DNA of 64,000 nucleotides, from positions 246,397-310,396 of IMG/VR virus record IMGVR_UViG_3300046542_000291. The stretch is one strand, 5' to 3'. A program made the translations under genes and the position numbers. Shown piece after piece: positions 1,808 through 64,000 of this stretch; the stretch's first letter is position 1, and each line of letters opens with the position of its first letter. The notes beneath the pieces are model-generated. The model did not search any database. It was not told the DNA's origin and worked only from the letters and a program-made list of their open reading frames with translations.

Positions 1808-1814
1808 GAACGAC

Positions 1815-2626: not shown

Positions 2627-2668
2627 GTTATACACGAAAGTAATATACACTTTAAAAAGCTTTCAATC
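2627..2668 (-). promoter_or_regulatory. early promoter, extended TATATTAC motif
   Basis: Minus strand GATTGAAAGCTTTTTAAAGTGTATATTACTTTCGTGTATAAC. Confidence 0.8.
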
Positions 2669-2671
2669 GTG

Positions 2672-3118: not shown

Positions 3119-3153
3119 AAAAGCTTTTCCTTATTTTCAGCGTTTGAAGTGAA

Positions 3154-3324
3154 TTACAGCCCGTGGTAAGCGACTGTAAATACCAGAAAGATCAGAGTGA
3201 AAACCGTCAAGCCTCTAACGGTAATCCAACTCTTTGGTTGTTCAGGGGGATTCGGGTTGGAGCGCGGTTGTTGATCATCAGGTGTAGCTTGGCGTGGTGC
3301 GGGATCAATGTAACGAACAGCCAT
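3154..3324 (-). CDS. 56-aa tail-anchored membrane protein (not in the ORF track)
   Basis: Manual translation MAVRYIDPAPRQATPDDQQPRSNPNPPEQPKSWITVRGLTVFTLIFLVFTVAYHGL; AGAGGG SD; first ORF after an early promoter. Confidence 0.7.
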   Translation of the reverse strand: MAVRYIDPAPRQATPDDQQPRSNPNPPEQPKSWITVRGLTVFTLIFLVFTVAYHGL

Positions 3325-3346
3325 GGTCAAGCCCTCTTGTGTGTAT

Positions 3347-3388
3347 TAGATTCACAAAAGTAATATAGGCTTTTAAATGCTTTCAATC
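3347..3388 (-). promoter_or_regulatory. early promoter, extended TATATTAC motif (overlaps the 3' end of 3373..3747)
   Basis: Minus strand GATTGAAAGCATTTAAAAGCCTATATTACTTTTGTGAATCTA. Confidence 0.8.
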
Positions 3389-47085: not shown

Positions 47086-47094
47086 TCAGTCACC

Positions 47095-49224: not shown

Positions 49225-49369
49225 TCTTTTTGTTCTCCTTCACGGGAATATCCTGGACCGACGGAATATTCCCAACGAACATTACTGCACGGCTATAAGT
49301 AACACAGCCATGCATTGGGCTAAGATTACTCGTGCCCAACAGTTCCGGACAGATCTTTTCTTTTTGCAT
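49217..49369 (-). CDS. 50-aa mini-protein homologous to the N-terminus of the adjacent nvRNAP beta subunit
   Basis: GGAG SD plus ATG at 49369; LLG..xL.P..G.....R..MF...I matches the downstream subunit without gaps; 8-bp overlap with it. Confidence 0.7.
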   Translation of the reverse strand: MQKEKICPELLGTSNLSPMHGCVTYSRAVMFVGNIPSVQDIPVKENKKND

Positions 49370-49400
49370 TGCTACTCCCATGGCCCTATCACTTGCAACA

Positions 49401-49424
49401 ATGTTATATAGATCTGAGATAAAA
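49401..49424 (-). promoter_or_regulatory. promoter, TCTCAGATCTATATAACA subclass
   Basis: Near-identical motif to 54526-54550 and 63981-64000. Confidence 0.7.
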
Positions 49425-49444
49425 TGCACTTAAAAGGTGAAGAT

Positions 49445-49810
49445 ATGGCATTTACAATTCTGACCGATATGGCGCAACCAGGAGACGACGTTTACTACGA
49501 CCCCAAATTTCGCCTGATTGCAGAAACTCACATGGTGATTCTTCGACAGGAAGATATCTCCCGGCAACAAATCGACTTAGACCTTTTCTATCAATACGAA
49601 GGTAACTTCTACGGTTACTTGGTAGAGATTGGAGTTCAGCCAGAACTCCATTGGTTGTACATGCGGGTTAACGGCATGACCAACCCAAACCAATTCGCCA
49701 AGGAAGTACGCGATCCTTACGGACGTGCGTATTCACCTGTGCTGATTCGTCCCAATGACAACATCATCAGTGGGCTTGTCCAGTACTACATGAGTCGAAA
49801 ATTTAAATGA
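49445..49810 (+). CDS. LysM-like / T4 gp53-like baseplate protein candidate (probable start MAFTILT)
   Basis: YGYLVEIGVQPELHWLYMRVNGMTNP resembles the gp53/LysM 'YG...LW.I...N...P' pattern; AAGGTG SD. Confidence 0.55.
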   Translation: MAFTILTDMAQPGDDVYYDPKFRLIAETHMVILRQEDISRQQIDLDLFYQYEGNFYGYLVEIGVQPELHWLYMRVNGMTNPNQFAKEVRDPYGRAYSPVLIRPNDNIISGLVQYYMSRKFK

Positions 49811-49812
49811 CA

Positions 49813-49838
49813 ATTGGGGAACCCGAAGGTTCCCCAAT
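49813..49838. terminator. bidirectional terminator
   Basis: attggggaacc-cgaa-ggttccccaat between convergent genes. Confidence 0.8.
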
Positions 49839-49849
49839 ATGCCGTCTTG

Positions 49850-51235
49850 TTACAGCGAGCTACCTTGCTGCGGGAATCCACCGTACTGCGGCTGCTGAGG
49901 CATCATCATTGGTTGAGGCATCATTTGCTGCGGTTGAGCGAAGATCTGCATGAACGGGTTCTGCTGCATTTGTTGCTGGTACTGCATGGCTTGTACCTGA
50001 GGCTGCAGCCATGGCAATTGAATGCCTTGGTTCTGCGGTTGTTGGAAGCCAGGCATGTTTTGCATCGGAGTAGCCATGGATGGTTGCAGCATTACCGGCT
50101 GGCCGTACTGGTTGTAAACCATCTGCGGTTGTTGTGACATCATCGGAGCAGGCTGCTGTTGGAACTGCGGCTGCTGGGATTTGAGGAAGTCACTTACCGA
50201 AATGGTGTCGCCAGGTTTGCTTGCTGTGGTTGGAGCGGCTGCATTCAAGCCAGCGCCCATCTGCGGCATCTGGCCGACCATTTGTGGAACGTACTGGTTG
50301 GCTGGTTGAGCTGCAGGTTGCTGCTGTTGTGCTTGCGCTGCGGCTGGAGCACCGGCTTCGTCGGTTTCATTCACACCACCGTCGTTACCGTTCAGTGGTG
50401 GGATCTCGTTGTAAACTTCCGGGAAGGATTCCCAGATGTTCTCGTCGTACAGAGGGAACGGTTTGATCCCCAGGTGCAACGGTTCATTGAAACGAATGAT
50501 CGACTTGTTCAGCTGGTTGCAGATTTTCCAGTACGCTTTGATCAGCGCAGTGAAGAACGGTGCAACGCGAGTAGTGGTACCCGCTGCGTACTCTTCCGGC
50601 GAATCGCCGAATGGAACGACCAGCTTGAACAGCTCCAGGATGACCTTGCCGTGTTTCTTGCCCAGGTCTACGCCCAGCACTTCCTTCTCACCGCTGTTCA
50701 GCTCGTCGATGATTGGGAAACGAATCACAGCCATGCGATTCACTTTGGTACCGTCGATGGTACCGCCATGTTTCAAGAAGACCGATACGATCTTGTTCTT
50801 CTTGTTCGCACTGGACATCAGCTTGTTGTAAGCCACCAGCGTGTTCTTGTCCGCGTTGGCCAGCTTGGCCAGTACGGTTGCCATTTCTGGCGGCAGGTCT
50901 TTGTGCAGGCTGGTATCGACAGCGACGCGCAACAGCGCATCGGTCAGGTAACCGACCATGAATGCAATGTTGGCTTTCGCCGCACGCTGCATGTGTTGCA
51001 ACACCGGTGACGTGCCTTTACGCGCCAGGTTTTCTGACAGTGGGTGGAACGGCTGATAATCTTCACCGAACCCATCACGCAGGAACTTGTTGGATGGGAA
51101 GGCCAGACGCTTACCGTCTACCTTCGCTGGTTCCAACGTACCGGTCGGAGTCAGGATACTGAACAAGTCATCCTCACCGATCGAGTAGTTGAATGCCGGG
51201 GCGATTGCCTTATAGACCTTCGAAAGGGATTGCAT
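49850..51235 (-). CDS. conserved nucleus-block protein (phiKZ gp70-like) with a Q/P/M-rich C-terminal tail
   Basis: Position between PicA and the beta subunit; last ~150 aa are low complexity. Confidence 0.65.
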   Translation of the reverse strand: MQSLSKVYKAIAPAFNYSIGEDDLFSILTPTGTLEPAKVDGKRLAFPSNKFLRDGFGEDYQPFHPLSENLARKGTSPVLQHMQRAAKANIAFMVGYLTDALLRVAVDTSLHKDLPPEMATVLAKLANADKNTLVAYNKLMSSANKKNKIVSVFLKHGGTIDGTKVNRMAVIRFPIIDELNSGEKEVLGVDLGKKHGKVILELFKLVVPFGDSPEEYAAGTTTRVAPFFTALIKAYWKICNQLNKSIIRFNEPLHLGIKPFPLYDENIWESFPEVYNEIPPLNGNDGGVNETDEAGAPAAAQAQQQQPAAQPANQYVPQMVGQMPQMGAGLNAAAPTTASKPGDTISVSDFLKSQQPQFQQQPAPMMSQQPQMVYNQYGQPVMLQPSMATPMQNMPGFQQPQNQGIQLPWLQPQVQAMQYQQQMQQNPFMQIFAQPQQMMPQPMMMPQQPQYGGFPQQGSSL

Positions 51236-52889
51236 TTACGTCACCTTGTGCGTATTGAGGGTTGTATGGGGCGGCCGATGCAACTGGATGCTGGTACGGC
51301 TGGACCATGTACTGATTGTGTTGTTGTGGAGCGGCACTGCTCAGCGAACCGCCTTGAACCGTGGTATTGGAGCCACTGTTGAAGTTGTTCGGGATCACGT
51401 TCTGAACAAGCCAGATCATGTCCGTCGAGATCTTGTTCGCCTTCGCGCCATCACGGGTGATGACTGGCGAGAACAGACCGTCCGAGAATGTCGGAGCCAC
51501 GAAGCGAGTTGGTGCTTCACCACCCAGGCTGATATCGATTACCGAATCACCGGCCAAGTCAGACGTGAGACTGATCTGGAACGGAATGCCGTTGTTGTGA
51601 GTGAGTGCGTTCAGGCAGTCTGTGCCCAAGCGACGCTCAAATTCCAGCAGGTAAGGCCGAGCATCGATACCCTCCATTACGAGCTTGGTACCTTCACCAC
51701 TGATTTGGAACGCGTAGGTACCCGGCATGTTGCCATTCGTTACTGCAATGGTCACCAGACGCAGGTAGTTGTCCATCATGATCGATGGGATGGTTTGGGC
51801 CAGCATCGACGCTGCGATCGAAGTTGGGTCCGCGCCTTTGAAGTGGCAGGACTGTTCCGCATAGTTTACCTTGCGGATCGACTGGCCGTTGTCCATGGAG
51901 TACTTGGTGACTTCACCGTAGCGGAGCGTGTCCGGGAATTCCCGGTTCAGATCCGACAGCGTGATGAAACCACGTTCCATGTAACCACAGCGTTCCTTCA
52001 AGATAGCCAGGAAGGTGTTCTTGTGGATGTCGTCGTTTTGTACGTGAGCCTGTGCTTCGCCCAACAACAGTTCCATGTTGGAAGCTGTGTCATCGAAACC
52101 TTCAGCCGCCATGGCTGCTTCCTTCACGGAATGCTGGAAAGCGTTCAGCGAGTTGGAAACGTAGCGAGTCGGAGAAGTGTCCTGACGATGGGAGTACTGA
52201 TACGCACCACACTCACCAACCATTGTACGGTAGTCGTACGCACGGTTGACTGTGCCCGGGAATGCCCCGGACTGTTGCAGACGGTTTACGGTCTGCAGAG
52301 TTTGGCCGATCGAGAAGACGTCTTCAGGACGGACCAGGTGAGATGCTGCTGTCGAGTAGTAACCATTCGCACCGGCGTTCATGTCGAGCGGCGTTACGAT
52401 CTGGTTGGACGAAACGATTTGTGCATGCTTCTGCATGCCCATCGGTGTGTGCTTCATCGCTTCCGTGATCACAGTCTCGGAGTTGAAGTAGATCCGCATG
52501 TTCGGATCAAGGTAGTTCATCGACGCATCACACTGGTCGGTGTAAACGAAGAAGATCCGTTGGGTAGTGGTACCCTTGTAGATTGGATGCTCTTCACGAA
52601 CACGCAGCATGCCACGGAAACGGCGGGAGTTCCAACCGTTAGCGATACCAACTGCACCTTCGGTCATTGCAGAAGGTTTTACGATTTCACCCGCGAGCGA
52701 CTGTACAGCGGACACGCCAAGGTTAGCGCCCCCACGAGTTGCCCGCGCCAGATTTTCGATAACGCTTTCGTTGACGTGGACCTGGAACGGCCGAAGCTGT
52801 TGTTCCTGATAGGTCCCTGTCTGGGTCAGAAGGAACATGTCAACGCGAACGTTGGCATTACCCAGACCTGGCATGGAGAAATTGGACAT
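51210..52889 (-). CDS. picA: phage-nucleus protein import factor PicA/Imp1 (phiKZ gp69-like)
   Basis: Synteny directly after the gp68 homolog; size; motifs TGTYQEQQLRPF, IANGWNSRRFR and RPEDVF. Identification is inferred. Confidence 0.7.
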   Translation of the reverse strand: MSNFSMPGLGNANVRVDMFLLTQTGTYQEQQLRPFQVHVNESVIENLARATRGGANLGVSAVQSLAGEIVKPSAMTEGAVGIANGWNSRRFRGMLRVREEHPIYKGTTTQRIFFVYTDQCDASMNYLDPNMRIYFNSETVITEAMKHTPMGMQKHAQIVSSNQIVTPLDMNAGANGYYSTAASHLVRPEDVFSIGQTLQTVNRLQQSGAFPGTVNRAYDYRTMVGECGAYQYSHRQDTSPTRYVSNSLNAFQHSVKEAAMAAEGFDDTASNMELLLGEAQAHVQNDDIHKNTFLAILKERCGYMERGFITLSDLNREFPDTLRYGEVTKYSMDNGQSIRKVNYAEQSCHFKGADPTSIAASMLAQTIPSIMMDNYLRLVTIAVTNGNMPGTYAFQISGEGTKLVMEGIDARPYLLEFERRLGTDCLNALTHNNGIPFQISLTSDLAGDSVIDISLGGEAPTRFVAPTFSDGLFSPVITRDGAKANKISTDMIWLVQNVIPNNFNSGSNTTVQGGSLSSAAPQQHNQYMVQPYQHPVASAAPYNPQYAQGDVNAIPFEGL

Positions 52890-52915
52890 GGTGATACCTC
52901 TTGTGGATTGTGCAG

Positions 52916-54496
52916 TTACTTATTGAGATTACCGAGGTGAATAACCAGCTCAGTGATTGTTGCTTTGATCGTCGGTGGAACGATCAGTACGTTCGTGCCG
53001 GACACTTGACCGGCATCCTTGAACAACTGGTCTGGACCTCGATACACCCAGTGACTGGAGTGGATGGAGGCGTTCACGTTGTTAATCGCAATGCCTGCCA
53101 TGTTATCCGTCTTGAGTGCGGTACCGTTGTTCATGTACTGAGGAGCTTTCTGATGCGGAAACAACCGAATCATGTCTTCTTTGTACTTGATTGGGATACG
53201 CGCGTTAGAACGCGGTTGGCTGAGTTGGTTCTGAGACTGGTAGTCGCCGTACGTCACCAAGTCCACTTGCATGAACACCGCGATGTCTTTGAAACCCCAA
53301 TGCCAGATCAACGCTTGCGCTGCAGCCAACATGTTGTTCACTGCCACCTTGTTGATGTGGTAGAACGCTCGTGCTGGGAATGACCGAGCCATGACCCATT
53401 GCGCCAGTTTGATCTGGTGCGGGTAGATCGGAGTAGAAGCCACATTACTGATAGCATCCACACACAGCTTGAGTTTACCCAGATCGATTGTTGGATCAAC
53501 CTTTCGTGCCAACTTCAGCACGTTCAGCGCATCGACGTTGAATGCTTCGATGTCTCCAGGGGAAACACGATGCTTAGTCTTGTGCGCTTCGATGAACGAA
53601 GTCTTATCGTCATCGTCCCCACCGGACTCAGGCCGCTTTTCGTTTACACGATCAGCAGTCGTACGCTCGGCTGGGTTAAGGTTCGACTTCACGTAGCGAT
53701 ACGTGTTTGCCACGATCGAGTGAGAGGTCGGATCATCCAGTGGAACAATCGTCAAACGACGGACCAGGACTTTGGATTGGAGATGCACCGGTACTTCGAC
53801 CGACGACATGCCACGCCACAGCTGACCCAGAGTTGTTGCTTCGGCTTCCACGCAGAACCTGACGTAGCCAGCCAACTTTTCAAACGCGGTGTCAACATCC
53901 TCACCATGAGGACCTTTCTCACCGACTGGCCAGTGTGCGATTTCGCAGTCACTGATCAGGCCGACTACTTCGTTCTCCTTATGGAGTTCGTTCTCAGTAC
54001 CGGCTTCGATGTACTCACCCCAAATAGGGATCATTGGTCGAACAGCCAGTGCCACAGTAGCCAGGTTGATGTATTCGTGTTCCAGATACGTCTGGTCCAC
54101 TTTGTTGTAACGGGACTCGGCAGTAATCTTCTTCTCGACTTCTACCGGGATGTGCAAGTTCCCAACCGTCATCAACCAACGACGCATGTCATTCATCGAC
54201 AACCGTTCGTACAGCTCACGGATGTAGTAGCGCAAAGACATCGCAACCCGCATGCTATCCAACGGCATATCCAAGATATCCCGAATTCGCGAGTAGCAAT
54301 TCCAGATATGGTCCTTGTCTTCCTCGCTAACAAAGCTGCTATTAAGGAAGCCATTGAACTCTTTGAACACACGCTGCTGGTCTGGCAGTTTTACTTTGGC
54401 GTATGCCTTCGTTGAGAAGGCGATCTGTTGCATTTTGTGCTCTACGGTGACCTGAGTAAAGCCGTTACCCTGAACACCAGTGACGGTAAGCTGCAT
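52916..54496 (-). CDS. nvRNAP promoter-specificity subunit (phiKZ gp68-like)
   Basis: 526 aa; TYLEHEYINL...RPMIPIWGEYI; synteny. Confidence 0.75.
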   Translation of the reverse strand: MQLTVTGVQGNGFTQVTVEHKMQQIAFSTKAYAKVKLPDQQRVFKEFNGFLNSSFVSEEDKDHIWNCYSRIRDILDMPLDSMRVAMSLRYYIRELYERLSMNDMRRWLMTVGNLHIPVEVEKKITAESRYNKVDQTYLEHEYINLATVALAVRPMIPIWGEYIEAGTENELHKENEVVGLISDCEIAHWPVGEKGPHGEDVDTAFEKLAGYVRFCVEAEATTLGQLWRGMSSVEVPVHLQSKVLVRRLTIVPLDDPTSHSIVANTYRYVKSNLNPAERTTADRVNEKRPESGGDDDDKTSFIEAHKTKHRVSPGDIEAFNVDALNVLKLARKVDPTIDLGKLKLCVDAISNVASTPIYPHQIKLAQWVMARSFPARAFYHINKVAVNNMLAAAQALIWHWGFKDIAVFMQVDLVTYGDYQSQNQLSQPRSNARIPIKYKEDMIRLFPHQKAPQYMNNGTALKTDNMAGIAINNVNASIHSSHWVYRGPDQLFKDAGQVSGTNVLIVPPTIKATITELVIHLGNLNK

Positions 54497-54525
54497 GGGT
54501 TCTCCTCTTGCAGGTGGATCTACAA

Positions 54526-54550
54526 ATGTAATATAGATCTGAGATTTTTT
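54526..54550 (-). promoter_or_regulatory. promoter AAAAAATCTCAGATCTATATTACAT
   Basis: Contains TATATTAC about 30 bp upstream of the gp68-like start. Confidence 0.8.
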
Positions 54551-54615
54551 GCAGTCTCTCAGCTACGAGAGGGCATAGAGCATCCTTCATACGAAGGACA
54601 CTCTTAGGCGTTCAA

Positions 54616-55392
54616 TCAGAAATCAGGGATGTCTTCGAAAGTTGCTTCAAAGTTGGTCTTGGCTGGAGCGCCGCCACCGTACGAGTTACCGCCGCCGCCA
54701 CCATTACCACCGCGGTTGAAGTTGTTACCGCCACCGCCCTGGCCACCGCGGTTGAAACCACCACCACCTTGACCGCCACCACCACCGCCAGCGAAGTTAG
54801 CCGGGTTGGCCACGTTCTTGGCGTTCGGATCGAACTGGGAAACCATCAGGTTGTAGACCACTGCTTCCGCAGGAACCACGAAACCGTAAGCGTAGGCTTC
54901 CGACATTTCTTTCGGGCTGATGGTCGAGCCGTCAGCGTTGGTGATGTTGTGGTATTTCGCTGGACCGAAGAAGAAGCGAATACGTGGACGGTTTGGCTGC
55001 GTGGAGATGATCGCGATGTAGATGCGACCACTTTCAGCTTCACGACCAACCATCAGTTTGGCCAAGACCATCGGCTTGTCCAGTTTCTTGCCAGCGACGA
55101 AGTCATCTTCGTAAGTGAAGATACGTTCGGCTGGAACATCTTTGCCGTCCAGAAGTTGACGGACGTAGTGCACCATCGCACCGAAGGTCGGCAGATCGCA
55201 CCGGAAATCAATCTTGCCGTGGTTCATGTCGCCTTCTACACCGGTCTTGACGACCATGCGTGGAACGTTCCCGATGACTTGGAAACGGAAGGACGGACGC
55301 TTGCTCCCACCCGAGACAGGTGCTGCGAACAACCAGTTGGACATTACTGCAAAGGCGTTCAGGGTAGGGGCTGGAATGTTGTTTTGGGACAT
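54616..55392 (-). CDS. chmC: nucleus-associated RNA-binding protein ChmC-like (phiKZ gp67-like; probable start MSQNNIP)
   Basis: Immediately upstream of the gp68-like gene; beta-rich core plus a Gly/Asn/RGG-rich tail and acidic DIPDF end. Confidence 0.65.
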   Translation of the reverse strand: MSQNNIPAPTLNAFAVMSNWLFAAPVSGGSKRPSFRFQVIGNVPRMVVKTGVEGDMNHGKIDFRCDLPTFGAMVHYVRQLLDGKDVPAERIFTYEDDFVAGKKLDKPMVLAKLMVGREAESGRIYIAIISTQPNRPRIRFFFGPAKYHNITNADGSTISPKEMSEAYAYGFVVPAEAVVYNLMVSQFDPNAKNVANPANFAGGGGGGQGGGGFNRGGQGGGGNNFNRGGNGGGGGNSYGGGAPAKTNFEATFEDIPDF

Positions 55393-55483
55393 GCGAAAAA
55401 ACTCCGGATATATTTTTCCATTTGCCGTTAGCAATGCGGCAATTCGGTCTTGTGGTGATCACGTACTATAGGGCTGGTGAGTA

Positions 55484-56311
55484 TTATTTCCTCAGCAGCT
55501 TATAGCAATTTCTTAGTTCTTGACTGGCACCCATGACATCGTGATAAACTTTGTCTTGGCTGGTGATACCTGTCCATTTTTTGGTCTTCGCGAGTTCTTT
55601 CAGTTCGTCGCAGATCGCCTTTGGTTGTTTATCGATCATTACCGAATCACCGAACACCTGGAGTGTGAACTCCGTGAATGGCATTGGTGTATCCTCCTTT
55701 ATACCGTTCAGCTTGGTGTACCAAGTTTGATAGGTCTTTAGCTTCCCCGTGTGGGATTCCAGCAGGAGCAATCGAGTGAACTGTGGTTTCCACAATAGCT
55801 CGTGTGGGTAATGCGTAAGAAGGGTTACCACCCCTTCACCGCCTTTCGGCTTTTGGTCAATCTCCATGATATCCATATCTTCAGCTTTCATCCTTGCGGC
55901 CAGCTCAATCGCTACAAAGCGTTCGAACATGTCGTAAGTCAGTTGCTTCGGTGTTTTGGCTTCTTTAAAGTTAGCCTTGGGGAAGTTCCATCTAACCCCA
56001 TCTTTGGTAGCCAGATAGAATCGCACCTTTGCGGTGAACCCTTTCTGTAGTAGTGCTGCCGGAATCGTCTCTACTTCTTTCAGCAAGACTTCCACGGCCT
56101 GCTCGTAGTTGAGCGAGTCGCGTTTATCCGTTTTGACCGCTTCGAAAAGATTTCGGGCCAACGTTCTAATGTTGACCCAGATCTCCTTAACGGTTTTTAC
56201 ATCTACTGGTTGCCTGGGTGGATTCGGGTGTGTACCCAACAAACCCTCGAAAGCATAAGAAGTACCGATGCTAACCGGTATCGAGCCCACGTCTCTCTCG
56301 ATGATATCCAT
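55484..56311 (-). CDS. conserved hypothetical protein (phiKZ gp66-like)
   Basis: Operon position; WVNIRTLARN and LLESHTG motifs. Confidence 0.6.
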   Translation of the reverse strand: MDIIERDVGSIPVSIGTSYAFEGLLGTHPNPPRQPVDVKTVKEIWVNIRTLARNLFEAVKTDKRDSLNYEQAVEVLLKEVETIPAALLQKGFTAKVRFYLATKDGVRWNFPKANFKEAKTPKQLTYDMFERFVAIELAARMKAEDMDIMEIDQKPKGGEGVVTLLTHYPHELLWKPQFTRLLLLESHTGKLKTYQTWYTKLNGIKEDTPMPFTEFTLQVFGDSVMIDKQPKAICDELKELAKTKKWTGITSQDKVYHDVMGASQELRNCYKLLRK

Positions 56312-56315
56312 GCTA

Positions 56316-57461: not shown

Positions 57462-58071
57462 CTTCTTCTTCAGTAAAACAGTTCGAGGTGGGGGAAACTG
57501 TCTGCATGGTCATCGCAGGTTTGCCCTCCATTCTCAGCTGCTCCGCTGGAGTGCCGTTCGGGTTTTCTGCGGTCGCATACAGATCGATCTTGGTACCGTA
57601 CTTACGTAGGATATTGTCGATCGGTATAATGATTGTTTCATCCTTGTCCGGAACAATCGTGATGTCATCCAGAAAGCTCTGCATGGTGTCATCAATAACC
57701 GCAGACTGGTTCAAGTCACGGTAACGACCCATGTTGGCAATGACGTCAGCCACTGTCAAACCACCTTCCATCTGAGGGATAGTGGTCAGGGGGATCTGGA
57801 AGACCGCTGGAACAGTGAACAAGATGTTATTCTTGTCGTTGTCAGCGTGTACCCGCAACGGGTTACTGAGGTCACCACAGAAGCGCTTGTACTTCTGAAT
57901 GGAATCAGGTACGAACAACTTTTCCAACAAAGGGATCACGTAAGCACGAAATCCCGTTTCGTTGATGGTCGGCATGTTCGCCTCGATCCCAGCCAGAATC
58001 TTGGATGAGAAGTCATCGACCTCTGCACCCAAGTACGCCGCACGTTGGCGACGCATTTCTAGTGGGTCCAT
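57451..58071 (-). CDS. conserved hypothetical protein
   Basis: 206-aa ORF overlapping the nuclease start. Confidence 0.65.
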   Translation of the reverse strand: MDPLEMRRQRAAYLGAEVDDFSSKILAGIEANMPTINETGFRAYVIPLLEKLFVPDSIQKYKRFCGDLSNPLRVHADNDKNNILFTVPAVFQIPLTTIPQMEGGLTVADVIANMGRYRDLNQSAVIDDTMQSFLDDITIVPDKDETIIIPIDNILRKYGTKIDLYATAENPNGTPAEQLRMEGKPAMTMQTVSPTSNCFTEEEDED

Positions 58072-58076
58072 GAGAC

Positions 58077-58631
58077 TTACTCCGGAGTGACACCGTTCAG
58101 GTCGTATTCACCAGGCGCTACGGCAGTGGTGACTTCTTCCACGGTGGGTGCAGCACCAGGACCGTCAATGAAGAACCAACCGGCTTTGCCGTCTTCAACC
58201 AGATTACGTTTGATGACTTCGGCCGCAATCGGGCCGGTGCCTTCGTTTTCTGGTTCGTCCAGATTGCCGATGGTGTAAAAGTCGACGGTGTCACCAGTGC
58301 GCTTGACCAGGATCGAACGGCGATCAGTCGCGTCGGTTGGTTTGTCGACCGGAATGAAGGTCAGGTCTTCAGCACGAGTTGGGGTACCCGACATGCCTTG
58401 TGCACGGCCCAGCAGGCCGTCGGACAGTTCGTGGTAGATCTGACCCATGGCACCGACGATTTGTTGTGGCAGCATCAGCTGAGCTTTCTTCACCTGAGCA
58501 ACCAGGCTAGTGAAGGAGCTTTCCAGCAAAGCGCACCGCTTTTCCAGAATACCCAGGCGTGCAGCCATACCTTCCAGGTTCATAGGTGCAGCTTCTTCGG
58601 TAGCGACTTGAGTGTTAACTTCTTGTGGCAT
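58077..58631 (-). CDS. hypothetical protein with N-terminal coiled coil
   Basis: Tightly packed; GGAG SD. Confidence 0.65.
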   Translation of the reverse strand: MPQEVNTQVATEEAAPMNLEGMAARLGILEKRCALLESSFTSLVAQVKKAQLMLPQQIVGAMGQIYHELSDGLLGRAQGMSGTPTRAEDLTFIPVDKPTDATDRRSILVKRTGDTVDFYTIGNLDEPENEGTGPIAAEVIKRNLVEDGKAGWFFIDGPGAAPTVEEVTTAVAPGEYDLNGVTPE

Positions 58632-58632
58632 G

Positions 58633-59037
58633 TTACTCTCCGTTGTTTATCTTGGCGATGTTGATAATGCGTGAGTCTTGGAACTGTACAAGCTTCCCTA
58701 CGGTGATTGCTCGACCATTGGTATAGACTGTACCCAGGAACTCGATTGAGAACTTAGCAGGATCTTCTGGATCTGCAGTCACGTTGACATCGGCGGTTGC
58801 CTCTGGATCAAACGCATCTTGCATTTTCTTGTTCAAGACCGTACGAAGGTCCTGTTCAAGATCGTACATCCGTCCAGCATTCTGCTTCAAGATATATTGC
58901 AACGAGGTATTTTGTGTGCGGTGACTAACGCTTTGTGATTGGTTAGTTGCCAGGAAGCAGGAGATAATGTAGTCAGCTACTTCCTCCGGTGTGTCGGTCC
59001 ACCCTTTGACTCCCATTGTGGGAATAAACTTAGCCAT
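58633..59037 (-). CDS. conserved hypothetical protein (possibly T4 gp25-like; probable start MAKFIPT)
   Basis: GGAG SD; alpha/beta pattern. The fold is inferred. Confidence 0.55.
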   Translation of the reverse strand: MAKFIPTMGVKGWTDTPEEVADYIISCFLATNQSQSVSHRTQNTSLQYILKQNAGRMYDLEQDLRTVLNKKMQDAFDPEATADVNVTADPEDPAKFSIEFLGTVYTNGRAITVGKLVQFQDSRIINIAKINNGE

Positions 59038-59092
59038 TACAATCTCCATTTTGCTAGGTTGATCATAGGGTGAGGCAAAAAAAAATAAGAAG

Positions 59093-59112
59093 CGAGGACC
59101 CGAAGGTCCCCG
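59093..59112 (-). terminator. intrinsic terminator, cUUCGg
   Basis: cgaggacc-cgaa-ggtccccg followed by a long T run on the minus strand. Confidence 0.8.
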
Positions 59113-59118
59113 TCACTT

Positions 59119-59718
59119 TTATACCTTTGGTTTGCTTTGAGCTCGGTGAGGAACAGAGTTCACCACCATCACGTCATCGCCGACACTGACGAAGGGAACA
59201 TCGATATCAAACACGTCGGACAGGTTGATTGCCATATCGTCCACTATCCCTTGTTTGATGTAGACCGTCAATTCCTGGCCGTCACCCAGAATAAGGATGC
59301 GTTTTTCAGACTCCACCAGGTTACCGGCACTACCGAACTGAAGGGAGCCGTACGGAACACCCCGCGCGTCGCACGCACACCAGACGTCATTGATCAAACG
59401 CCAGTAGGCGTACTCGACTTGGCAGGGATCGCCAAAGAGAATACCTTCTGGTAACCGACCGCGGCGGACCGTGAGTTCACCCACTTCTTCACCGTCGAAG
59501 TCGGCCGATTGCAAACGACCTTGACGGAAGACAAGGCCATAGCGTTTATCTTCGATGCCTGACAAACAGTTGATCGTGTATGCCAGTTCTGGGTATTTGC
59601 GAGGCATGTAGACCTCACCAATGTTTTGGCTGAATGGCGAACTGAAGCCGTACCATTTGCCATCCACCCACCGTAAGGTGATCAGGCTTAAATCGAGGGT
59701 GCTATCGTTCGTTTCCAT
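59119..59718 (-). CDS. hypothetical protein
   Basis: GAGG SD; flanked by terminators. Confidence 0.65.
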   Translation of the reverse strand: METNDSTLDLSLITLRWVDGKWYGFSSPFSQNIGEVYMPRKYPELAYTINCLSGIEDKRYGLVFRQGRLQSADFDGEEVGELTVRRGRLPEGILFGDPCQVEYAYWRLINDVWCACDARGVPYGSLQFGSAGNLVESEKRILILGDGQELTVYIKQGIVDDMAINLSDVFDIDVPFVSVGDDVMVVNSVPHRAQSKPKV

Positions 59719-59743
59719 GTAAACCTCTTATGACGTTATAAAG

Positions 59744-59763
59744 GGAGCTCCCGAAGGAGCTCC
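59744..59763 (-). terminator. intrinsic terminator, cUUCGg
   Basis: ggagctcc-cgaa-ggagctcc. Confidence 0.75.
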
Positions 59764-59773
59764 TCTTATGGGG

Positions 59774-60385
59774 TTAACCCAGTTGCAGCCCGTAGGGCGA
59801 CGATGGATCTTCTTCACCGGCATCCAATGCATCGTTGACGGCATTCCAGGTGCGGAGGATATCCACACGCTGAGATACGGACAACTCATCGTTACCGTAA
59901 AGCTCTTCGTGGTAGTTGGTGAAGTAAGCTTCGTCTTCTTTGAACTTCACGATACCTGTGTTGACTTGACGCCAGTCGAATTGCTTCGCACCGATGTTAT
60001 CGCCTTGCAGGTTAGTGTAGGTCTCAGAGAACCCGTCTACTTCGTTGTTGACGTACATCTGCCGGAGTCTTGGCTCAGCCATGATCCAGCGTTGCATTAC
60101 CGGTGCAGCTGTCTGTAGACCTGCGATCGTACTGATTGCATGGATGGTGTTCGTATCCCATGCATTATCATTCTTCACAGTCAGGTTACGGAGAGCCTGG
60201 ATCGCATCGTTGGACGAGATCATTTGGTACATCGATCGCGCTTGGTCAAAGAAGGCCGAGGCTGTTGCACTCACCGTGTTGCGCAATGCATCCGTACGCT
60301 CACCCAACCAACCCATCGTGCCTTGATCGAGGTGTCCACCGGCACAGATGTCCATCAAATCAACACCGTGTGCTTGATGTAGCAT
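59774..60385 (-). CDS. conserved nucleus-block protein (phiKZ gp59-like, possibly Imp3)
   Basis: Coupled (TAATG) to the beta' subunit; AAPVMQRWIMAEP and EDPSS motifs. Assignment inferred from synteny. Confidence 0.55.
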   Translation of the reverse strand: MLHQAHGVDLMDICAGGHLDQGTMGWLGERTDALRNTVSATASAFFDQARSMYQMISSNDAIQALRNLTVKNDNAWDTNTIHAISTIAGLQTAAPVMQRWIMAEPRLRQMYVNNEVDGFSETYTNLQGDNIGAKQFDWRQVNTGIVKFKEDEAYFTNYHEELYGNDELSVSQRVDILRTWNAVNDALDAGEEDPSSPYGLQLG

Positions 60386-61842
60386 TAGCTAAACTCCTCT
60401 AATGGGGGTAGATAATCTTCGTGCGCCCAGTTGATGATCGTTTCCAACGCCGGGCCTTGAAGTTCAAGGTTACCCGAGATTTCATGCGGATCGTCAATCG
60501 ACAGTACCCAGGTGTGCGGTGCAATTCGCTCCGTTGCTTCAGTCAGATAGTTATCCGGCATCAGCGTCAGGTTGAGTTGGTCACCGTCGAAGTCGGCGTT
60601 AGGTGCTTTCAACACCAGTACAGACATCGAGATTGAGTTGTCGTTAATGTTGTCCTTCACACGAGTGATGAAGAACTGCTGTGTCGAACCACGCTGCAAC
60701 GTAGGGTTACGGTGGAACGTACAGGCTGGGCCTTTGTTCGGTGCTTCCTCAATCAACTCTTTGAACAGAGCATCGAGGACTGGGTTGTATTGCAGCACGT
60801 TCGAATAGATGAACCCTAAAGCTTCTTGGGTTGTCATGTCGTAACGTGGTCCGGTCAACTTGTTGATCAAGTGATACTTGAACAACTGGCAAGCAACGCC
60901 CCACGGGATGTGGAGTTCGTCATACCAGTGAATCCCGGAGATCGATGTGATTACCGCACGAGCGGTGAAGTTCAATCGACCACCCAGTACGTGGCGGCGT
61001 GCCAGTCCTGGTTTTTGTGCGATACGCTGTTTGTCGTAGTTCTCGTGGAACGTTGCCATCAACAGCAAAGCTTTCGCTGTACGGTTTTGCACCGTGATGG
61101 TCTTCAATGGGATCGGACTGTGTTTGATCGTACCCATTGTCAGAGCAGCATCGATTGCTGCGCCGATTGGCTTATCGATGTAGACGCCGGAGGTGGTACT
61201 TTCTACAACGAAGCACAACTTCGAAGGAACAGGGATTACCTGGGGGAACAGGTGTGCCTTGTTCTGAAACAGGAACTGAGCGAACTCTTGCTTGCCCAGA
61301 CTGATGATGTTCGACTCCATGCAGAAGCGCATGATGTCATCGAAGTTCATAATGAAGTTGTTCAGCCCCCGATCGAAACTACGTTGCATCAAGCGATTAG
61401 CCTTACGCGCAGTTTCCTTGGAGCTGATGGCATCGAGATCGAACTGATAACTGGCGTCCATGAAGTAGGCCAGGAAGTCAAACTCTTTACCGGACATGTG
61501 ACCAGACAGCATGATCAACAGTTCTGGACTGATCAGGCTGAGTACACCTTCCGGTGCACGAATCCACATGGATGGAACAATTGGACGATTAGAGGTAGAT
61601 ACAACAGGTGTGTTACAGATCTCGCAGATAACACCGATTTGGTGAGCGGTATCGAGATGTTCACACTCACACGACGCAGAGTTCTCAATCGCATCAGCAT
61701 CCTCGTAGTGAGAATACAGAGCACGGTTAAATTCCTCCTTATCGTCGGCATTGCTGGTGTTGAAGTCGTTCGCAAACACGATCTTGCCGGTGTGTGCCGC
61801 CAGCATTTCATCATGGTCTACGACCTCTGCGTATACGCCCAT
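60385..61842 (-). CDS. non-virion RNA polymerase beta' N-terminal catalytic subunit (phiKZ gp55-56.1-like), intron-less
   Basis: NADFDGD catalytic motif, RLNFTARAVI, RNPTL and a zinc finger CEC...CEIC. Confidence 0.92.
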   Translation of the reverse strand: MGVYAEVVDHDEMLAAHTGKIVFANDFNTSNADDKEEFNRALYSHYEDADAIENSASCECEHLDTAHQIGVICEICNTPVVSTSNRPIVPSMWIRAPEGVLSLISPELLIMLSGHMSGKEFDFLAYFMDASYQFDLDAISSKETARKANRLMQRSFDRGLNNFIMNFDDIMRFCMESNIISLGKQEFAQFLFQNKAHLFPQVIPVPSKLCFVVESTTSGVYIDKPIGAAIDAALTMGTIKHSPIPLKTITVQNRTAKALLLMATFHENYDKQRIAQKPGLARRHVLGGRLNFTARAVITSISGIHWYDELHIPWGVACQLFKYHLINKLTGPRYDMTTQEALGFIYSNVLQYNPVLDALFKELIEEAPNKGPACTFHRNPTLQRGSTQQFFITRVKDNINDNSISMSVLVLKAPNADFDGDQLNLTLMPDNYLTEATERIAPHTWVLSIDDPHEISGNLELQGPALETIINWAHEDYLPPLEEFS

Positions 61843-61882
61843 GGTTTCCCCTTCGCTGTGTAGCGGACAAAAAAAGAGAATA

Positions 61883-61909
61883 GACCGACTCCCCGAAGGG
61901 AGCCGATCC
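61883..61909 (-). terminator. strong terminator after chimallin
   Basis: Minus strand GGATCGGCTCCC-TTCG-GGGAGTCGGTC, then TATTCTC and a T run. Confidence 0.85.
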
Positions 61910-62029
61910 GTCTCTGTATTGCGAGGTTGTTTGCTCGGTTGGTCTAGCTTTATCCATTACTGGGTGCGCGATCCAACCGCAACCTCTGGCTAGGACTGTA
62001 GTTATCAGTCAGTTAGCCGGAGTGCACGA

Positions 62030-63913
62030 TTAGTACACGGTACCAGTGGTGGAACCCATCGGCATTGCGAAGCCCTGCTGATTGTTCATCAGCGGAGCAA
62101 CTTGTGCCATGCCAGTCACGGCGAAGCCGGTCAGGTTGGCGTTGCCGGTGAAGCGTTGACCACCGAATACCGAACCGACGTTCTCCATGCCGATGCTGAT
62201 GCCAGCGTTGATCGCAGCAGCGTTGCAGGCCTGGATGAATTTCGGGTTGAACATGCCACGGTGTACACGACCGGTGTAGGTCACGTTGCCCAGGTATTGC
62301 TTGTCGTAGGAGTCCGATTTCTTCAGACGCACTTCGCTGTGAACGTTGGTGTTCGCACGAGTTGCGTAGAAGTCCATGAACTCGTCCTTCAAGCCTTCGG
62401 AGGCGTTCAGGGCAGCCAGGGTGTCGAGGTCGCGGATGTCGCGCAGCTCGCCGTCTTCGTCAGCGTAGTAGCCGAGGTGGAAGTCCGCACCGTACGGGGT
62501 GATGATCGGCTCTTTGTTGTGGTCGAACAGCGCCATGAAGTTCTCACGGCCGTACAGGTTGTGGGCTGCACGGATGATGGCTTCTTGAGCTTGTTGACGA
62601 CGAGGGCCGCCCATCGCGTCGATGTAGATGGCGTCGATGTGTGCGTTGTCGCCCAGGCGGTCCAGGTCGATCATGAAGATCGGGTTCTGTTGCACTTGGG
62701 TGTACATCAGACCGGCGAATTCCTGCTCGGTGAAGGTAGCCGATTTGGTTTCGACTTTCTTACCGGCAACCAGGTAGCCGATCGCACCGATGTCGCGTGG
62801 ATCTTTCTTCTTGCCGATCGACGGAACGAAGGCACGAGCCCACGATTGACCGACGGTAACCAGGAAGGAGTTGGCCATTGCGAACAGGTGCATTTCCAGG
62901 GTGTTGGCCATGATCCAGTTCGCTTGACGAACTGCGGTGATCACGATCGCTGGAACGAACGGCGGAGCCGGTGGCATCGGAGGCATGCCGTACACTTGCT
63001 GCTGTGGAACTTGCTGCGGCGGGATTTCCAGGTTGACGAACAGCGACACTTGGTTGAAGTTGCTGTCGGCGTCGAAGTATTCGTTTTCCTGGACTTGACC
63101 TTGGCCGGGCTTCTTCACACGGTTCAGGCTGACGCAGATGTCGTTACGAACCGGAACACCGGTGGTGGTGTGAACAGGCAGGGCGCTGTAGTCGATACGA
63201 GCGGCCAGTTGTTCGTCGCTGCCTTTGACGTCGGTAGCCAGGCTGAACGGACGCTCGTTACCCAGACGGGCAACCATGTCGTCGCAACGGTTGACCGAAG
63301 TGATCAGGACGTTGCGGACCAGAGCGTTGTCTTCCAGATCGAAATCGCCATGCAGGCTCAGAGGACCGGCGGAACGAACGTCAGCAGTCGGGTGACCAGC
63401 AGCCACTTGCACGTAGGCAGCCAGACGGGCCCAGTACAGAGGAGTGAACACGTCGACGGCGTCGGGCTTGACTTCGAAGTTGTCTACGTTGTAACCGTTC
63501 GGGATCTGGAAGACCTTCGGCTTCAGAACGGCGTGATTGTCGACCACGATCAGCGGACGCACGACGATGACGGTTTTGCCTTGGGCGTCACGAGCCACCT
63601 TGGTGACCAGGATCGCCGACATGCCAACGCGGTGTTGGTTGCGGTCGAAACGGTACAGGGTGAAGTCGTCCAGCAGGTCTTGAGTGGCGATGCACTGTTT
63701 GGCCTGTTCGGCGAAGACGGTGAGAGCTTTGGTGGAACGGGCGTCGCTACCTTCAGCGCGGCCAGTACGACCGAAGCGTTCGTTGATTTGCGAGATGCCG
63801 CCAGTGACCGGACGCTGAGCTTGTGCTGCTGGCTGACCCTGTTGAGGAGTTGCTTGAGCGGCTGGAGCTGCTTGCGATTGGTTCTGACCGGTTGGACCTT
63901 GGTTAACTGCCAT
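62030..63913 (-). CDS. chmA: chimallin, major phage-nucleus shell protein
   Basis: 627 aa with extreme codon bias; directly upstream of nvRNAP beta'; motifs PRDIGAIGY, GYYADEDGELRDIRDLD and FNPKFI; disordered termini. Confidence 0.88.
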   Translation of the reverse strand: MAVNQGPTGQNQSQAAPAAQATPQQGQPAAQAQRPVTGGISQINERFGRTGRAEGSDARSTKALTVFAEQAKQCIATQDLLDDFTLYRFDRNQHRVGMSAILVTKVARDAQGKTVIVVRPLIVVDNHAVLKPKVFQIPNGYNVDNFEVKPDAVDVFTPLYWARLAAYVQVAAGHPTADVRSAGPLSLHGDFDLEDNALVRNVLITSVNRCDDMVARLGNERPFSLATDVKGSDEQLAARIDYSALPVHTTTGVPVRNDICVSLNRVKKPGQGQVQENEYFDADSNFNQVSLFVNLEIPPQQVPQQQVYGMPPMPPAPPFVPAIVITAVRQANWIMANTLEMHLFAMANSFLVTVGQSWARAFVPSIGKKKDPRDIGAIGYLVAGKKVETKSATFTEQEFAGLMYTQVQQNPIFMIDLDRLGDNAHIDAIYIDAMGGPRRQQAQEAIIRAAHNLYGRENFMALFDHNKEPIITPYGADFHLGYYADEDGELRDIRDLDTLAALNASEGLKDEFMDFYATRANTNVHSEVRLKKSDSYDKQYLGNVTYTGRVHRGMFNPKFIQACNAAAINAGISIGMENVGSVFGGQRFTGNANLTGFAVTGMAQVAPLMNNQQGFAMPMGSTTGTVY

Positions 63914-63980
63914 GATGCTTTTTCCTTTACGATGTTACGATTCTTGATCAAGAGTCCTGATATCTCTATCAGGTTGCATA

Positions 63981-64000
63981 ATTGTGATATAGACTTGAGA
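63981..64000 (-). promoter_or_regulatory. chimallin promoter TCTCAAGTCTATATCACAAT (may extend beyond the window)
   Basis: Matches the TCTCA..TCTATAT.ACA motif at 49401 and 54526. Confidence 0.65.

What the first reader, a model, noticed from the sequence alone, without database searches (positions are those of the whole stretch)
49401..64000. A dedicated promoter subclass (TCTCAGATCTATAT[T/A/C]ACA) for chimallin and nvRNAP genes
Seen: three minus-strand sites, TCTCAGATCTATATAACAT (49401-49419), TCTCAGATCTATATTACAT (54526-54544) and TCTCAAGTCTATATCACAA (63982-64000). They precede the mini-gene/beta subunit, the gp68-PicA-gp70 operon and chimallin. They share the TATATTAC-like core with the accessory early promoters but replace the upstream TTGAAAG...TTAAA with TCTCAGATC. 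Inference: the nucleus-building regulon is co-regulated separately, through different vRNAP strength, dual vRNAP/nvRNAP recognition, or a factor binding the AGATCT palindrome.
Basis: partly seen in the sequence, partly recalled or inferred. Interest (0 to 1): 0.6.

Follow-up and report, generated by a model that had tools for sequence, protein, structure and literature searches.

The report
Second class of jumbo-phage early promoters
The three sites are real early promoters of a nucleus-forming jumbo phage, and they belong to one of two promoter classes conserved across seven related phages; this class drives chimallin, all parts of the phage's second RNA polymerase and other core genes, and in phiKZ its transcripts keep accumulating while those of the other class fade.

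Summary
In detail: three minus-strand sites match TCTCARRTCTATATNAC, against 0.09 expected by chance. The window is the last 64 kb of a 310-kb chimallivirus genome from a rhizosphere metagenome. Its nearest relatives are Psa21, D6 and RVTF4.

Genome-wide, TATATTAC-type early promoters fall into two classes:
- **Class A** has TTGAAAGC..TTTAAAGCC upstream and GTGAAT downstream. There are 13 in this genome.
- **Class B** has an A/T tract plus TCTCAGATC upstream. There are 9, including the three sites.

The same split occurs in Psa21, RVTF4, PhiPA3, phiKZ, 201phi2-1 and Phabio. Class is kept at orthologous genes (B→B 162, B→A 9; A→A 83, A→B 14), although the flanking DNA is randomised. In six genomes the nearest upstream early promoter of chimallin, all five nvRNAP genes, PicA, gp70 and PhuZ is class B. 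In Phabio this holds for the four units checked.

Published phiKZ RNA-seq separates the classes. With infection frozen before nucleus formation, class B transcripts rise (median 35/10-min ratio 1.95) and class A transcripts fall (0.49; p = 9e-5). After normal nucleus formation both fall alike, which argues against nvRNAP reading class B.

The class is not dedicated to these genes, and the AGATCT palindrome is not its conserved feature. There are no RNA data for this phage.

The parts
63984..64000 (-). Chimallin promoter, class B. It comprises the proximal box TCTCAAGTC and the core TATATCAC (63984-63991). The distal box and A-tract lie beyond the window end. The predicted start is near 63977.
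   Evidence: Orthologous class B promoters lie upstream of chimallin in 7 other phages.
62030..63913 (-). Chimallin (nuclear shell protein) gene.
   Evidence: phrog_4795, E = 3e-163. tblastn gives 57% identity to Psa21 and 43% to phiKZ gp54.
61882..61909 (-). Strong hairpin terminator between chimallin and the gp55-like gene.
   Evidence: The same hairpin plus T-rich tract occurs in most relatives.
60385..61842 (-). nvRNAP subunit gene, homologue of phiKZ gp55. It has no early motif of its own; the nearest upstream early promoter is the chimallin one.
   Evidence: phrog_2987, E = 1.5e-173.
54528..54555 (-). Promoter of the gp68-PicA-gp70 unit, class B. It comprises the distal ACTGCA, an A-tract, TCTCAGATC and the core TATATTAC (54528-54535). 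The predicted start is near 54521-54523.
   Evidence: The sequence is almost identical in Psa21, D6 and RVTF4 and is class B in all relatives.
49850..54496 (-). Three-gene unit: gp68-like nvRNAP subunit (52916-54496), PicA-like (51210-52889) and gp70-like (49850-51235).
   Evidence: phrog_3209, phrog_3141 and phrog_3520. tblastn with phiKZ gp68, gp69 and gp70 gives 60%, 51% and 51% identity.
49813..49838 (-). Hairpin terminator ending the gp68 unit. It lies between convergent genes.
49403..49430 (-). Promoter of the nvRNAP beta/beta' unit, class B, T-tract variant. It comprises GTGCA, TTTTA, TCTCAGATC and the non-consensus core TATATAAC (49403-49410). The predicted start is near 49396.
   Evidence: Orthologous class B promoters occur in all relatives, and 6 of 7 phages have a non-consensus core.
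49220..49381 (-). Small ORF (54 aa) between the promoter and the beta gene. It resembles the N-terminus of the beta subunit.
   Evidence: BLASTP against the beta N-terminus gives E = 3e-6.
45112..49224 (-). nvRNAP beta (47095-49224) and beta' C-terminal-type subunit (45112-47085).
   Evidence: phrog_3295, E = 5e-231; phrog_3015, E = 1e-233.
599..3367 (-). Four class A promoters, given for contrast, with cores at 599-606, 1734-1741, 2640-2647 and 3360-3367. A fifth lies at 42297-42304.

Best explanation
The three sites are early promoters read by the RNA polymerase that the phage injects with its DNA (vRNAP).

**Shared architecture (shown in the sequences).** All early promoters in this phage group share a -10-like element, TATATTAC. 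They also share a conserved TG about 7 nt downstream, which is the likely start. The start position is inferred from the published statement that the element is centred near -10.

**Two classes (shown).** The promoters come in two conserved classes. The classes differ in the roughly 10 bp directly upstream of the -10-like element, in the tract before that, and in the first transcribed bases. The three sites belong to class B: an A/T tract plus T[C/T]T[C/G/A]A[G/A]AT[C/T].

**What class B does (shown in phiKZ, inferred here by orthology).** Class B marks a sustained or delayed-early sub-programme. It keeps producing mRNA for as long as the genome stays with the vRNAP, that is, before it moves into the phage nucleus. 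Class A gives an early burst that fades. This lets the phage accumulate mRNA for chimallin, the second polymerase (nvRNAP), PicA and PhuZ on a different schedule from the small, mostly lineage-specific class A genes.

**Mechanism (inferred, not shown).** The class-specific box changes how the vRNAP uses the promoter, or how a factor that travels with it or is made early does so. The available data cannot say whether B is switched on late or A is switched off.
For: **Promoter identity**
- The motif is at the stated sites and is far above chance.
- The sites are intergenic, co-oriented with their genes, and 29-78 nt upstream of start codons.
- They are orthologous to phiKZ and 201phi2-1 sites where early promoters or start sites have been mapped: PHIKZ054 in PMC8244752 and gp124 in PMC11512511.

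**Two classes**
- A mixture model separates A from B in seven genomes.
- Classifying by upstream bases alone still predicts core variants (p = 0.0018) and the downstream GTG (p = 2.6e-7).

**Selection**
- Class is kept between orthologous promoters: B→B 162 against B→A 9, and A→A 83 against A→B 14. Of 20 orthologous groups, 17 are pure.
- Identity between orthologous promoters is 0.73 in the proximal box, 0.27 at -70..-36 and 0.30 at +23..+40.

**Gene content**
- Chimallin, all five nvRNAP genes, PicA, gp70 and PhuZ lie behind class B in six genomes. In Phabio the four units checked do too.
- Class B units more often hold genes shared with the distant Erwinia phage RAY: 39 of 115 against 9 of 95, p = 2.7e-5.

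**Behaviour (phiKZ RNA-seq from PMC12571901, 11 class A and 12 class B first genes)**
- Control 15/10-min ratio: 0.89 for A, 1.31 for B (p = 3e-4).
- chmA knock-down 35/10-min ratio: 0.49 for A, 1.95 for B (p = 9e-5). A falls in 10 of 11 genes; B rises in 11 of 12.
- Neighbouring promoters of different class, gp241 and gp242, are 430 bp apart and still differ. Genome position is therefore not the cause.
Against: - There are no RNA data for this phage, so no start site has been mapped here.
- The kinetic evidence comes from one published phiKZ data set. I read it for 23 of about 33 units.
- Those values are normalised read counts. An apparent fall of class A may partly be a share effect. What is robust is the difference between the classes.
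- RNA levels mix synthesis and decay. The classes also differ in their first transcribed bases, so different mRNA stability could give the same picture.
- There are two exceptions: gp216 has an A motif but behaves like B, and gp166 has a B motif but behaves like A.
- Pairs of orthologous promoters are not phylogenetically independent.
- Noxifer shows no clean two-class pattern. In Erwinia RAY the pattern is only suggestive.
Confidence: 0.65

Rival explanations
1. The promoters fire alike and the difference lies in the RNA. Class A transcripts begin with a conserved GTGAAT(C)TAA-like leader that makes them short-lived or differently handled, while class B transcripts lack it. The upstream boxes would then be two interchangeable flavours of the same promoter.
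For: - Class A has a conserved element just downstream of the core. It would lie at the 5' end of the RNA.
- The phiKZ data measure RNA abundance only.
Against: - The upstream proximal box is the most conserved class-specific part: identity 0.73 between orthologues against 0.47 for +9..+22.
- Chimallin promoters in four relatives (Psa21, RVTF4, phiKZ, 201phi2-1) combine a class B upstream half with an A-like TGAATC downstream. In phiKZ, chimallin still behaves as class B.
Confidence: 0.15
2. The two classes are only two old promoter lineages copied along with their genes, and the class has no functional meaning.
For: - Orthologous pairs share ancestry, so some class conservation is expected.
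- With only the five closest genomes, gene conservation did not differ between the classes (p = 0.11).
Against: - Flanking intergenic DNA has decayed to random identity (0.27) while the class boxes are kept.
- Within each genome, non-orthologous promoters of a class share that genome's own variant of the box. Examples are TTTGAGATT in 201phi2-1 and TTTCAAATC in PhiPA3. That pattern points to recognition by a co-evolving protein.
- The classes differ in kinetics in phiKZ.
Confidence: 0.1
3. One reading: class B promoters are read by both polymerases, vRNAP early and nvRNAP later. This would keep chimallin and nvRNAP expressed once the genome is in the nucleus.
For: - phiKZ chimallin mRNA keeps rising in a normal infection (35/10-min ratio 2.04).
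- A secondary start with a middle-type motif is reported for PHIKZ054 (PMC8244752).
- In this window, the predicted chimallin start lies in TATG, the 4-nt core of phiKZ late promoters.
Against: - In a normal phiKZ infection, class B transcripts as a group fall after nucleus formation just like class A (0.14 against 0.16, p = 0.88). This includes gp68 (0.12) and gp71 (0.25).
- They persist only when nucleus formation is blocked. According to PMC12571901, middle and late (nvRNAP-dependent) reads are almost absent in that condition.
- The TATG is not conserved in the seven relatives.
Confidence: 0.06
4. One reading: a dimeric factor binds the AGATCT palindrome.
For: AGATCT is present at two of the three sites and in 5 of the 9 class B promoters of this genome.
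Against: - It is present in only 46 of 115 class B promoters across seven genomes, and rare in 201phi2-1 (2 of 18), PhiPA3 (3 of 15) and Phabio (4 of 18).
- The chimallin site here reads AAGTCT.
- The final T belongs to the shared TATAT core.
- Conservation is asymmetric: T[C/T]T.A[G/A]AT[C/T].
Confidence: 0.04

Closest known systems
phiKZ early (vRNAP) promoters, described as 28-32 promoters with one AT-rich consensus (PMC8244752, PMC10914365, PMC7598289, which cite Ceyssens et al. 2014)
   Same: - They share the TATATTAC-like element centred near -10.
- They lie on the same strand as the early genes and in the same positions before orthologous genes (chimallin, gp68).
- The phage family is the same.
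   Different: The papers I could read treat them as a single motif. Here they resolve into two conserved classes with different upstream boxes, different tolerance of core variants, different downstream bases and different transcript kinetics. The 201phi2-1 study reported the beta/beta' genes as transcribed from a middle promoter, and found the nearest early promoter about 5.5 kb upstream of the gp123 homologue (PMC11512511). Class B sites lie directly upstream of the beta unit and about 1.6 kb upstream of the gp123 homologue.
Expression clusters 'A' and 'B' of early phiKZ transcripts in the chmA knock-down time course (PMC12571901, Extended Data Fig. 6)
   Same: That study saw that early transcripts are prolonged when the nucleus cannot form, and it placed them in more than one cluster.
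   Different: In the text I could read, no link to promoter sequence is made. I made the link here from their source data. Their cluster letters are not my class letters.
T4 middle promoters (MotA box), from my own knowledge
   Same: The design is alike. They keep the same -10 element as early promoters but replace the upstream element, and this gives a later sub-programme with the same core polymerase.
   Different: T4 uses the host polymerase, sigma-70, AsiA and MotA. Here the polymerase is a phage multisubunit enzyme with no known sigma, and no factor is known. This is a resemblance in how it works, not membership.
T7 class II and class III promoters, from my own knowledge
   Same: One phage polymerase reads two promoter subclasses that differ at a few positions and are tied to different gene sets and timing.
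   Different: T7 uses a single-subunit polymerase, and the differences lie within one 23-bp consensus. The mechanism, involving lysozyme sensitivity and DNA entry, is unlikely to apply.

Membership tests
phiKZ-type vRNAP early promoter | A conserved AT-rich element of TATATTAC type. | tested here: met
   The cores are TATATAAC, TATATTAC and TATATCAC at 49403-49410, 54528-54535 and 63984-63991. In the genome there are 28 such sites on the gene strand and 4 on the other; one is an assembly duplicate.
phiKZ-type vRNAP early promoter | An intergenic position, co-oriented with and shortly upstream of an early-type gene. | tested here: met
   The start codon lies 29-78 nt after the first base of the core. 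The genes were identified.
phiKZ-type vRNAP early promoter | Orthology to experimentally mapped early promoters. | tested here: met
   The sites occupy the same positions as the phiKZ gp54 and gp68 sites and the 201phi2-1 gp124 site. Mapping is reported in PMC8244752 and PMC11512511.
phiKZ-type vRNAP early promoter | Transcripts start just downstream and are made by vRNAP without new protein synthesis. | not testable with these tools
   No RNA run holds this phage; only two DNA runs do.
Class B (sustained) early promoter, as defined in this report | The proximal box T[C/T]T[C/G/A]A[G/A]AT[C/T] abuts the core. It is preceded by an A- or T-tract and a distal A[C/T]TG[C/A]A-like box. | tested here: met
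   All three sites are assigned to class B with posterior 1.0, and again from upstream bases only.
Class B (sustained) early promoter, as defined in this report | Transcripts still accumulate between 10 and 15 min and keep rising when the infection is held before nucleus formation. | not testable with these tools
   This is shown only for the phiKZ orthologues gp54, gp68 and gp71 and nine other class B units.
phiKZ middle promoter | A TACT motif about 22 nt upstream of the start, preceded by an A-rich repeat (PMC8244752). | not tested
   No position matrix or start-site list was available; the supplements are not held. Indirect evidence argues against general nvRNAP use of class B.
phiKZ late promoter | TATG with G as the start (PMC7598289). 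| tested here: inconclusive
   The chimallin site has TATG at 63977-63980, exactly at the predicted start. The other two sites do not, and the seven relatives lack it at chimallin.
Bacterial sigma-70 promoter | TTGACA, then 16-18 nt, then TATAAT. | tested here: not met
   There is no match at any of the three sites. The region has fewer matches than shuffles (7 against 13.9).

The most novel reading that the evidence does not exclude
Nucleus-forming jumbo phages carry a conserved two-tier promoter code for the injected polymerase. One box type gives a burst of mostly lineage-specific takeover genes. The other gives sustained expression of the genes that build the nucleus, the spindle and the second polymerase. 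This would imply a second, still unknown specificity determinant acting inside the early infection vesicle. It could be a co-injected or early-made factor, or a second binding mode of the vRNAP.
Probability: 0.45. Interest if true: 0.75.

Novelty: new variant of a known kind. Interest (0 to 1): 0.62.

Why it matters
How chimalliviruses order gene expression during the first minutes, inside the early infection vesicle, is largely unknown. The early promoters are treated as one class, and no factor that guides the virion polymerase is known.

A conserved split that tracks both gene function and transcript kinetics gives a concrete handle on this. A 10-bp box can be swapped, used as bait for a binding factor, or used to predict timing in uncultured jumbo phages from sequence alone.

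It also appears to explain why earlier motif searches missed early promoters before some nvRNAP genes, as in 201phi2-1. It would also give phage engineers two kinds of early promoter to choose from.

Tried and rejected
- **DNA similarity.** Megablast of the region against phage records found only a 76-bp match, so I found relatives with the chimallin protein instead.
- **RNA evidence for this phage.** Only two DNA runs hold this sequence, one of them a rhizosphere metagenome. I therefore did not use read laying, and no start site could be mapped.
- **Hand-written motif rules.** The rules for the two classes left many clear promoters unassigned. I replaced them with a mixture model.
- **Class B as the more conserved genes.** With only the five closest genomes this was not significant (p = 0.11). 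It became clear only when the distant phage RAY served as the yardstick.
- **Papers and supplements.** The original phiKZ transcription paper is not held. The supplementary start-site tables of three papers are not held either. A full-text search for the core motif gave nothing relevant. A search for immediate-early or delayed-early classes in phiKZ gave nothing.
- **More distant phages.** Noxifer shows no clean two-class pattern. RAY shows only a hint of one.
- **Gene function.** A PHROG scan of class A first genes gave almost no families, 1 of 8.
- **Genome position as the cause of the kinetics.** Rejected, because the classes are interspersed and neighbours differ.
- **The small ORF as a split-off N-terminus of beta.** Rejected, because the beta ORF has its own complete N-terminus.

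Full report
**The observation.** The pattern TCTCARRTCTATATNAC, with up to two mismatches allowed, hits only these three places in 64 kb. Shuffles give 0.09 on average, and none of 100 shuffles reaches three. PHROG scans confirm the downstream genes:
- chimallin (62030-63913)
- a gp55-like nvRNAP subunit (60385-61842)
- the gp68-like, PicA-like and gp70-like genes (52916-54496, 51210-52889, 49850-51235)
- nvRNAP beta and beta' (47095-49224, 45112-47085)

**The genome.** The window is the last 64 kb of a single 310,396-bp contig with 51% G+C. Its last 127 bp repeat its first 127 bp, which is an assembly overlap. The chimallin promoter is therefore seen twice, and its upstream half lies outside the window. 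Only DNA runs, one of them a rhizosphere metagenome, hold the sequence. By chimallin, the nearest phages are Psa21, D6 and RVTF4 (55-57% identity), then the PhiPA3 group (48%), then phiKZ and 201phi2-1 (43-44%).

**Two classes of early promoter.** On the gene strand the genome has 28 TATATNAC sites, one of them the assembly duplicate; the other strand has 4. I fitted a mixture model with two motif classes plus a background class. It splits the real promoters into 13 of class A and 9 of class B.
- Class A has the consensus ATTgAAAGc.TTTtAAagcC, then TATATTAC, then Ttt.GTGaATctAa.
- Class B has the consensus A.TgcAaaaaATcTcAgATC, then TATATtAC.

The three sites are class B. I fetched the whole genomes of Psa21, RVTF4, PhiPA3, phiKZ, 201phi2-1 and Phabio. 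The same split appears in each, with 11-16 class A and 15-21 class B promoters.

The split is not an artefact of the model's starting assignments. When promoters are classified from the 24 upstream bases alone, class still predicts two other features:
- whether the core is exactly TATATTAC (79 of 95 in A, 73 of 115 in B; p = 0.0018)
- whether GTG lies at +5..+7 after the core (57 of 95 against 28 of 115; p = 2.6e-7)

**Class is conserved and under selection.**
- For each promoter I searched the other genomes with the genes within 1.5 kb downstream, then read the class of the promoter in front of the homologue. The counts are B→B 162, B→A 9, A→A 83 and A→B 14.
- Of 20 orthologous promoter groups present in three or more genomes, 17 are of one class. 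The impure ones include a merged paralogue family.
- These pairs share ancestry, so the counts are not independent. The surrounding DNA has randomised, however. Identity between orthologous promoters is 0.27 at -70..-36 and 0.30 at +23..+40. It is 0.61 in the distal box and tract, 0.73 in the proximal box and 0.93 in the core.
- Within a genome, unrelated promoters of a class share that genome's own spelling of the box. Examples are TTTGAGATT in 201phi2-1, TTTCAAATC or TCTCACATC in PhiPA3, and AAACAG against AAAGCC for class A. This is what co-evolution with a recognising protein would give.

**Gene content.**
- In six genomes, the nearest upstream early promoter is class B for chimallin, all five nvRNAP genes (homologues of gp55, gp68, gp71/73, gp74 and gp123), PicA, gp70 and PhuZ. 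In Phabio the chimallin, gp68, beta and gp123 units have class B promoters too.
- In this genome the other class B units lead to the gp123-like subunit, the PhuZ region, a gp43-like gene, a PRPP synthetase and some genes of unknown function.
- Class B units more often contain a gene with a homologue in the distant Erwinia phage RAY: 39 of 115 against 9 of 95 (p = 2.7e-5), and the direction is the same in every genome.
- Class A first genes are mostly small and have no PHROG family.
- Class A is not only accessory, because three class A groups are conserved in all six genomes.
- Class B is not dedicated to the nucleus and polymerase genes.

**What the literature says.** The papers I could read treat phiKZ early promoters as one AT-rich consensus of 28-32 promoters centred near -10 (PMC8244752, PMC10914365, PMC7598289, PMC13282480). 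The vRNAP is injected, stays with the DNA before the nucleus forms, and is excluded from the nucleus (PMC10612078). The 201phi2-1 study reports the beta/beta' genes as transcribed from a middle promoter, and its nearest early promoter for the gp123 homologue lay about 5.5 kb upstream (PMC11512511). Class B sites lie directly before the beta unit and about 1.6 kb before the gp123 homologue. Their cores are TATATTAC and TATATCAT respectively.

**Do the two classes behave differently?** There are no RNA data for this phage, so I used the phiKZ time course in the source data of PMC12571901. It samples 10, 15, 20, 25 and 35 min, in a control and in a chmA knock-down, with two replicates each. I read the rows for the first genes of 11 class A and 12 class B units. 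Apart from the four genes read first to learn the table's layout, these genes were picked before I saw their data. All class labels agree with the upstream-only classification. One search gives the following.

| Measure | Class A median | Class B median | p |
|---|---|---|---|
| Control, 15/10 min | 0.89 | 1.31 | 3e-4 |
| chmA knock-down, 35/10 min | 0.49 | 1.95 | 9e-5 |
| Control, 35/10 min | 0.16 | 0.14 | 0.88 |

- According to that paper, the knock-down freezes the infection at the early vesicle and almost abolishes middle and late transcription. In that condition A falls in 10 of 11 genes and B rises in 11 of 12 (Fisher p = 1e-4).
- In the control at 35 min both classes have fallen alike. 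Both are therefore early promoters that stop once the genome is in the nucleus, and class B is not generally read by the nvRNAP.
- Four genes stay higher in the control: gp54 (2.04), gp43, gp59 and gp103. For gp54 a secondary start with a middle-type motif is published (PMC8244752).
- Two genes go against their class: gp216 and gp166.
- The classes are interspersed along the genome. The neighbours gp241 (A) and gp242 (B), 430 bp apart, differ in the expected direction. Entry order of the DNA therefore does not explain the result.

**Caveats.**
- The counts are normalised, so the absolute fall of class A may partly be a share effect. The difference between the classes is what is robust.
- RNA level is synthesis minus decay. 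Class A also has a conserved leader-like element, so different mRNA stability remains a rival.
- The evidence is from one data set in one relative.
- Transfer to this phage rests on orthology of the promoters.

- The AGATCT palindrome occurs in only 46 of 115 class B promoters and is missing from the chimallin site here. The conserved pattern is asymmetric.
- Dual recognition by both polymerases is disfavoured by the control time course.
- 'Different vRNAP strength', or a factor acting on the box, remains open. It is the core of my preferred explanation.

**Transcription units in the window.**
- A strong hairpin (61882-61909) separates chimallin from the gp55-like gene. That gene has no early motif of its own in this phage or in any relative.
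- A hairpin at 49813-49838 ends the gp68 unit.
- The beta-unit promoter fills the 35 nt between its core and the start codon of a divergent gene.
- Predicted starts, taking the conserved TG about 7 nt after the core, are near 63977, 54521-54523 and 49396. These are inferences.

**Verdict.** In the literature available to me I found no description of this split or of its link to kinetics. The mechanism remains inferred.

Noticed in passing
window 63874-64000 and genome 1-127: The contig's last 127 bp repeat its first 127 bp, an assembly overlap of a circular or permuted genome. The true length is 310,269 bp. The chimallin promoter and the 5' end of the chimallin gene therefore appear twice.
   Followed up: yes
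window 63943-63952 (minus strand): The chimallin 5' leader holds the perfect palindrome CTTGATCAAG, about 40 nt after the promoter core. The same ten bases sit in the chimallin leader of all seven phages compared. Each genome has only 1-3 copies, against 0.3 expected. It could be a protein-binding site or a small RNA hairpin.
   Followed up: partly
window 49220-49381 (minus strand): The small ORF before the beta gene resembles the N-terminus of the beta subunit encoded just downstream (29% identity over 35 collinear residues, E = 3e-6). It looks like a decayed duplicate of the gene's 5' end. For phiKZ gp70.1 against gp71 the resemblance is weak (E = 0.11).
   Followed up: partly
window 49445-49810 (plus strand): A divergent gene starts with ATGGCATTTACAAT only about 35 nt from the beta-unit promoter core, so the promoter fills the whole intergenic gap. 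The arrangement, with a near-identical start sequence, is kept in all six relatives compared.
   Followed up: partly
window 61843-61909: The gp55-like nvRNAP gene begins right after a strong terminator and a T-rich tract and has no early motif. The same holds in most relatives. Either terminator read-through or an unrecognised promoter must supply it.
   Followed up: no
window 63977-63980 (minus strand): The predicted chimallin start lies in TATG, the four-base core of phiKZ late promoters. The seven relatives lack it at this place, so it may be chance.
   Followed up: partly
genome-wide; window 49403-49430: Class B has an A-tract form (chimallin, gp68 and gp123 units) and a T-tract form (beta unit and others). 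The beta-unit promoter has a non-consensus core in 6 of 7 phages: TATATCAT, TATATAAC, TATATCAC or TATATTAT.
   Followed up: partly
window 599-3400 and genome-wide: The two upstream boxes of class A read like a direct repeat, TTGAAAGC then TTTAAAGC, about 10-11 bp apart, which is one helical turn.
   Followed up: no
L001 30366-30947 (Psa21): In Psa21 an endonuclease gene sits between the class B promoter and the gp68 homologue. The promoter stayed in place upstream of the insert.
   Followed up: no
Erwinia phage RAY, loci L090-L103: In this distant phage the sites before chimallin, gp68 and beta share [A/C]AAG[T/C]C plus TA[T/C]ATTA[C/T]. Eight other early-like sites share TCTCAGACC-type boxes and a downstream GTGA. 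This hints at a similar split with different spelling.
   Followed up: partly
genome 176429 (minus strand): One promoter looks like a hybrid, with a class A-like distal half (AATGAAAGG) and a class B-like end (TTTTAAGTC). The model assigns it to class B.
   Followed up: no
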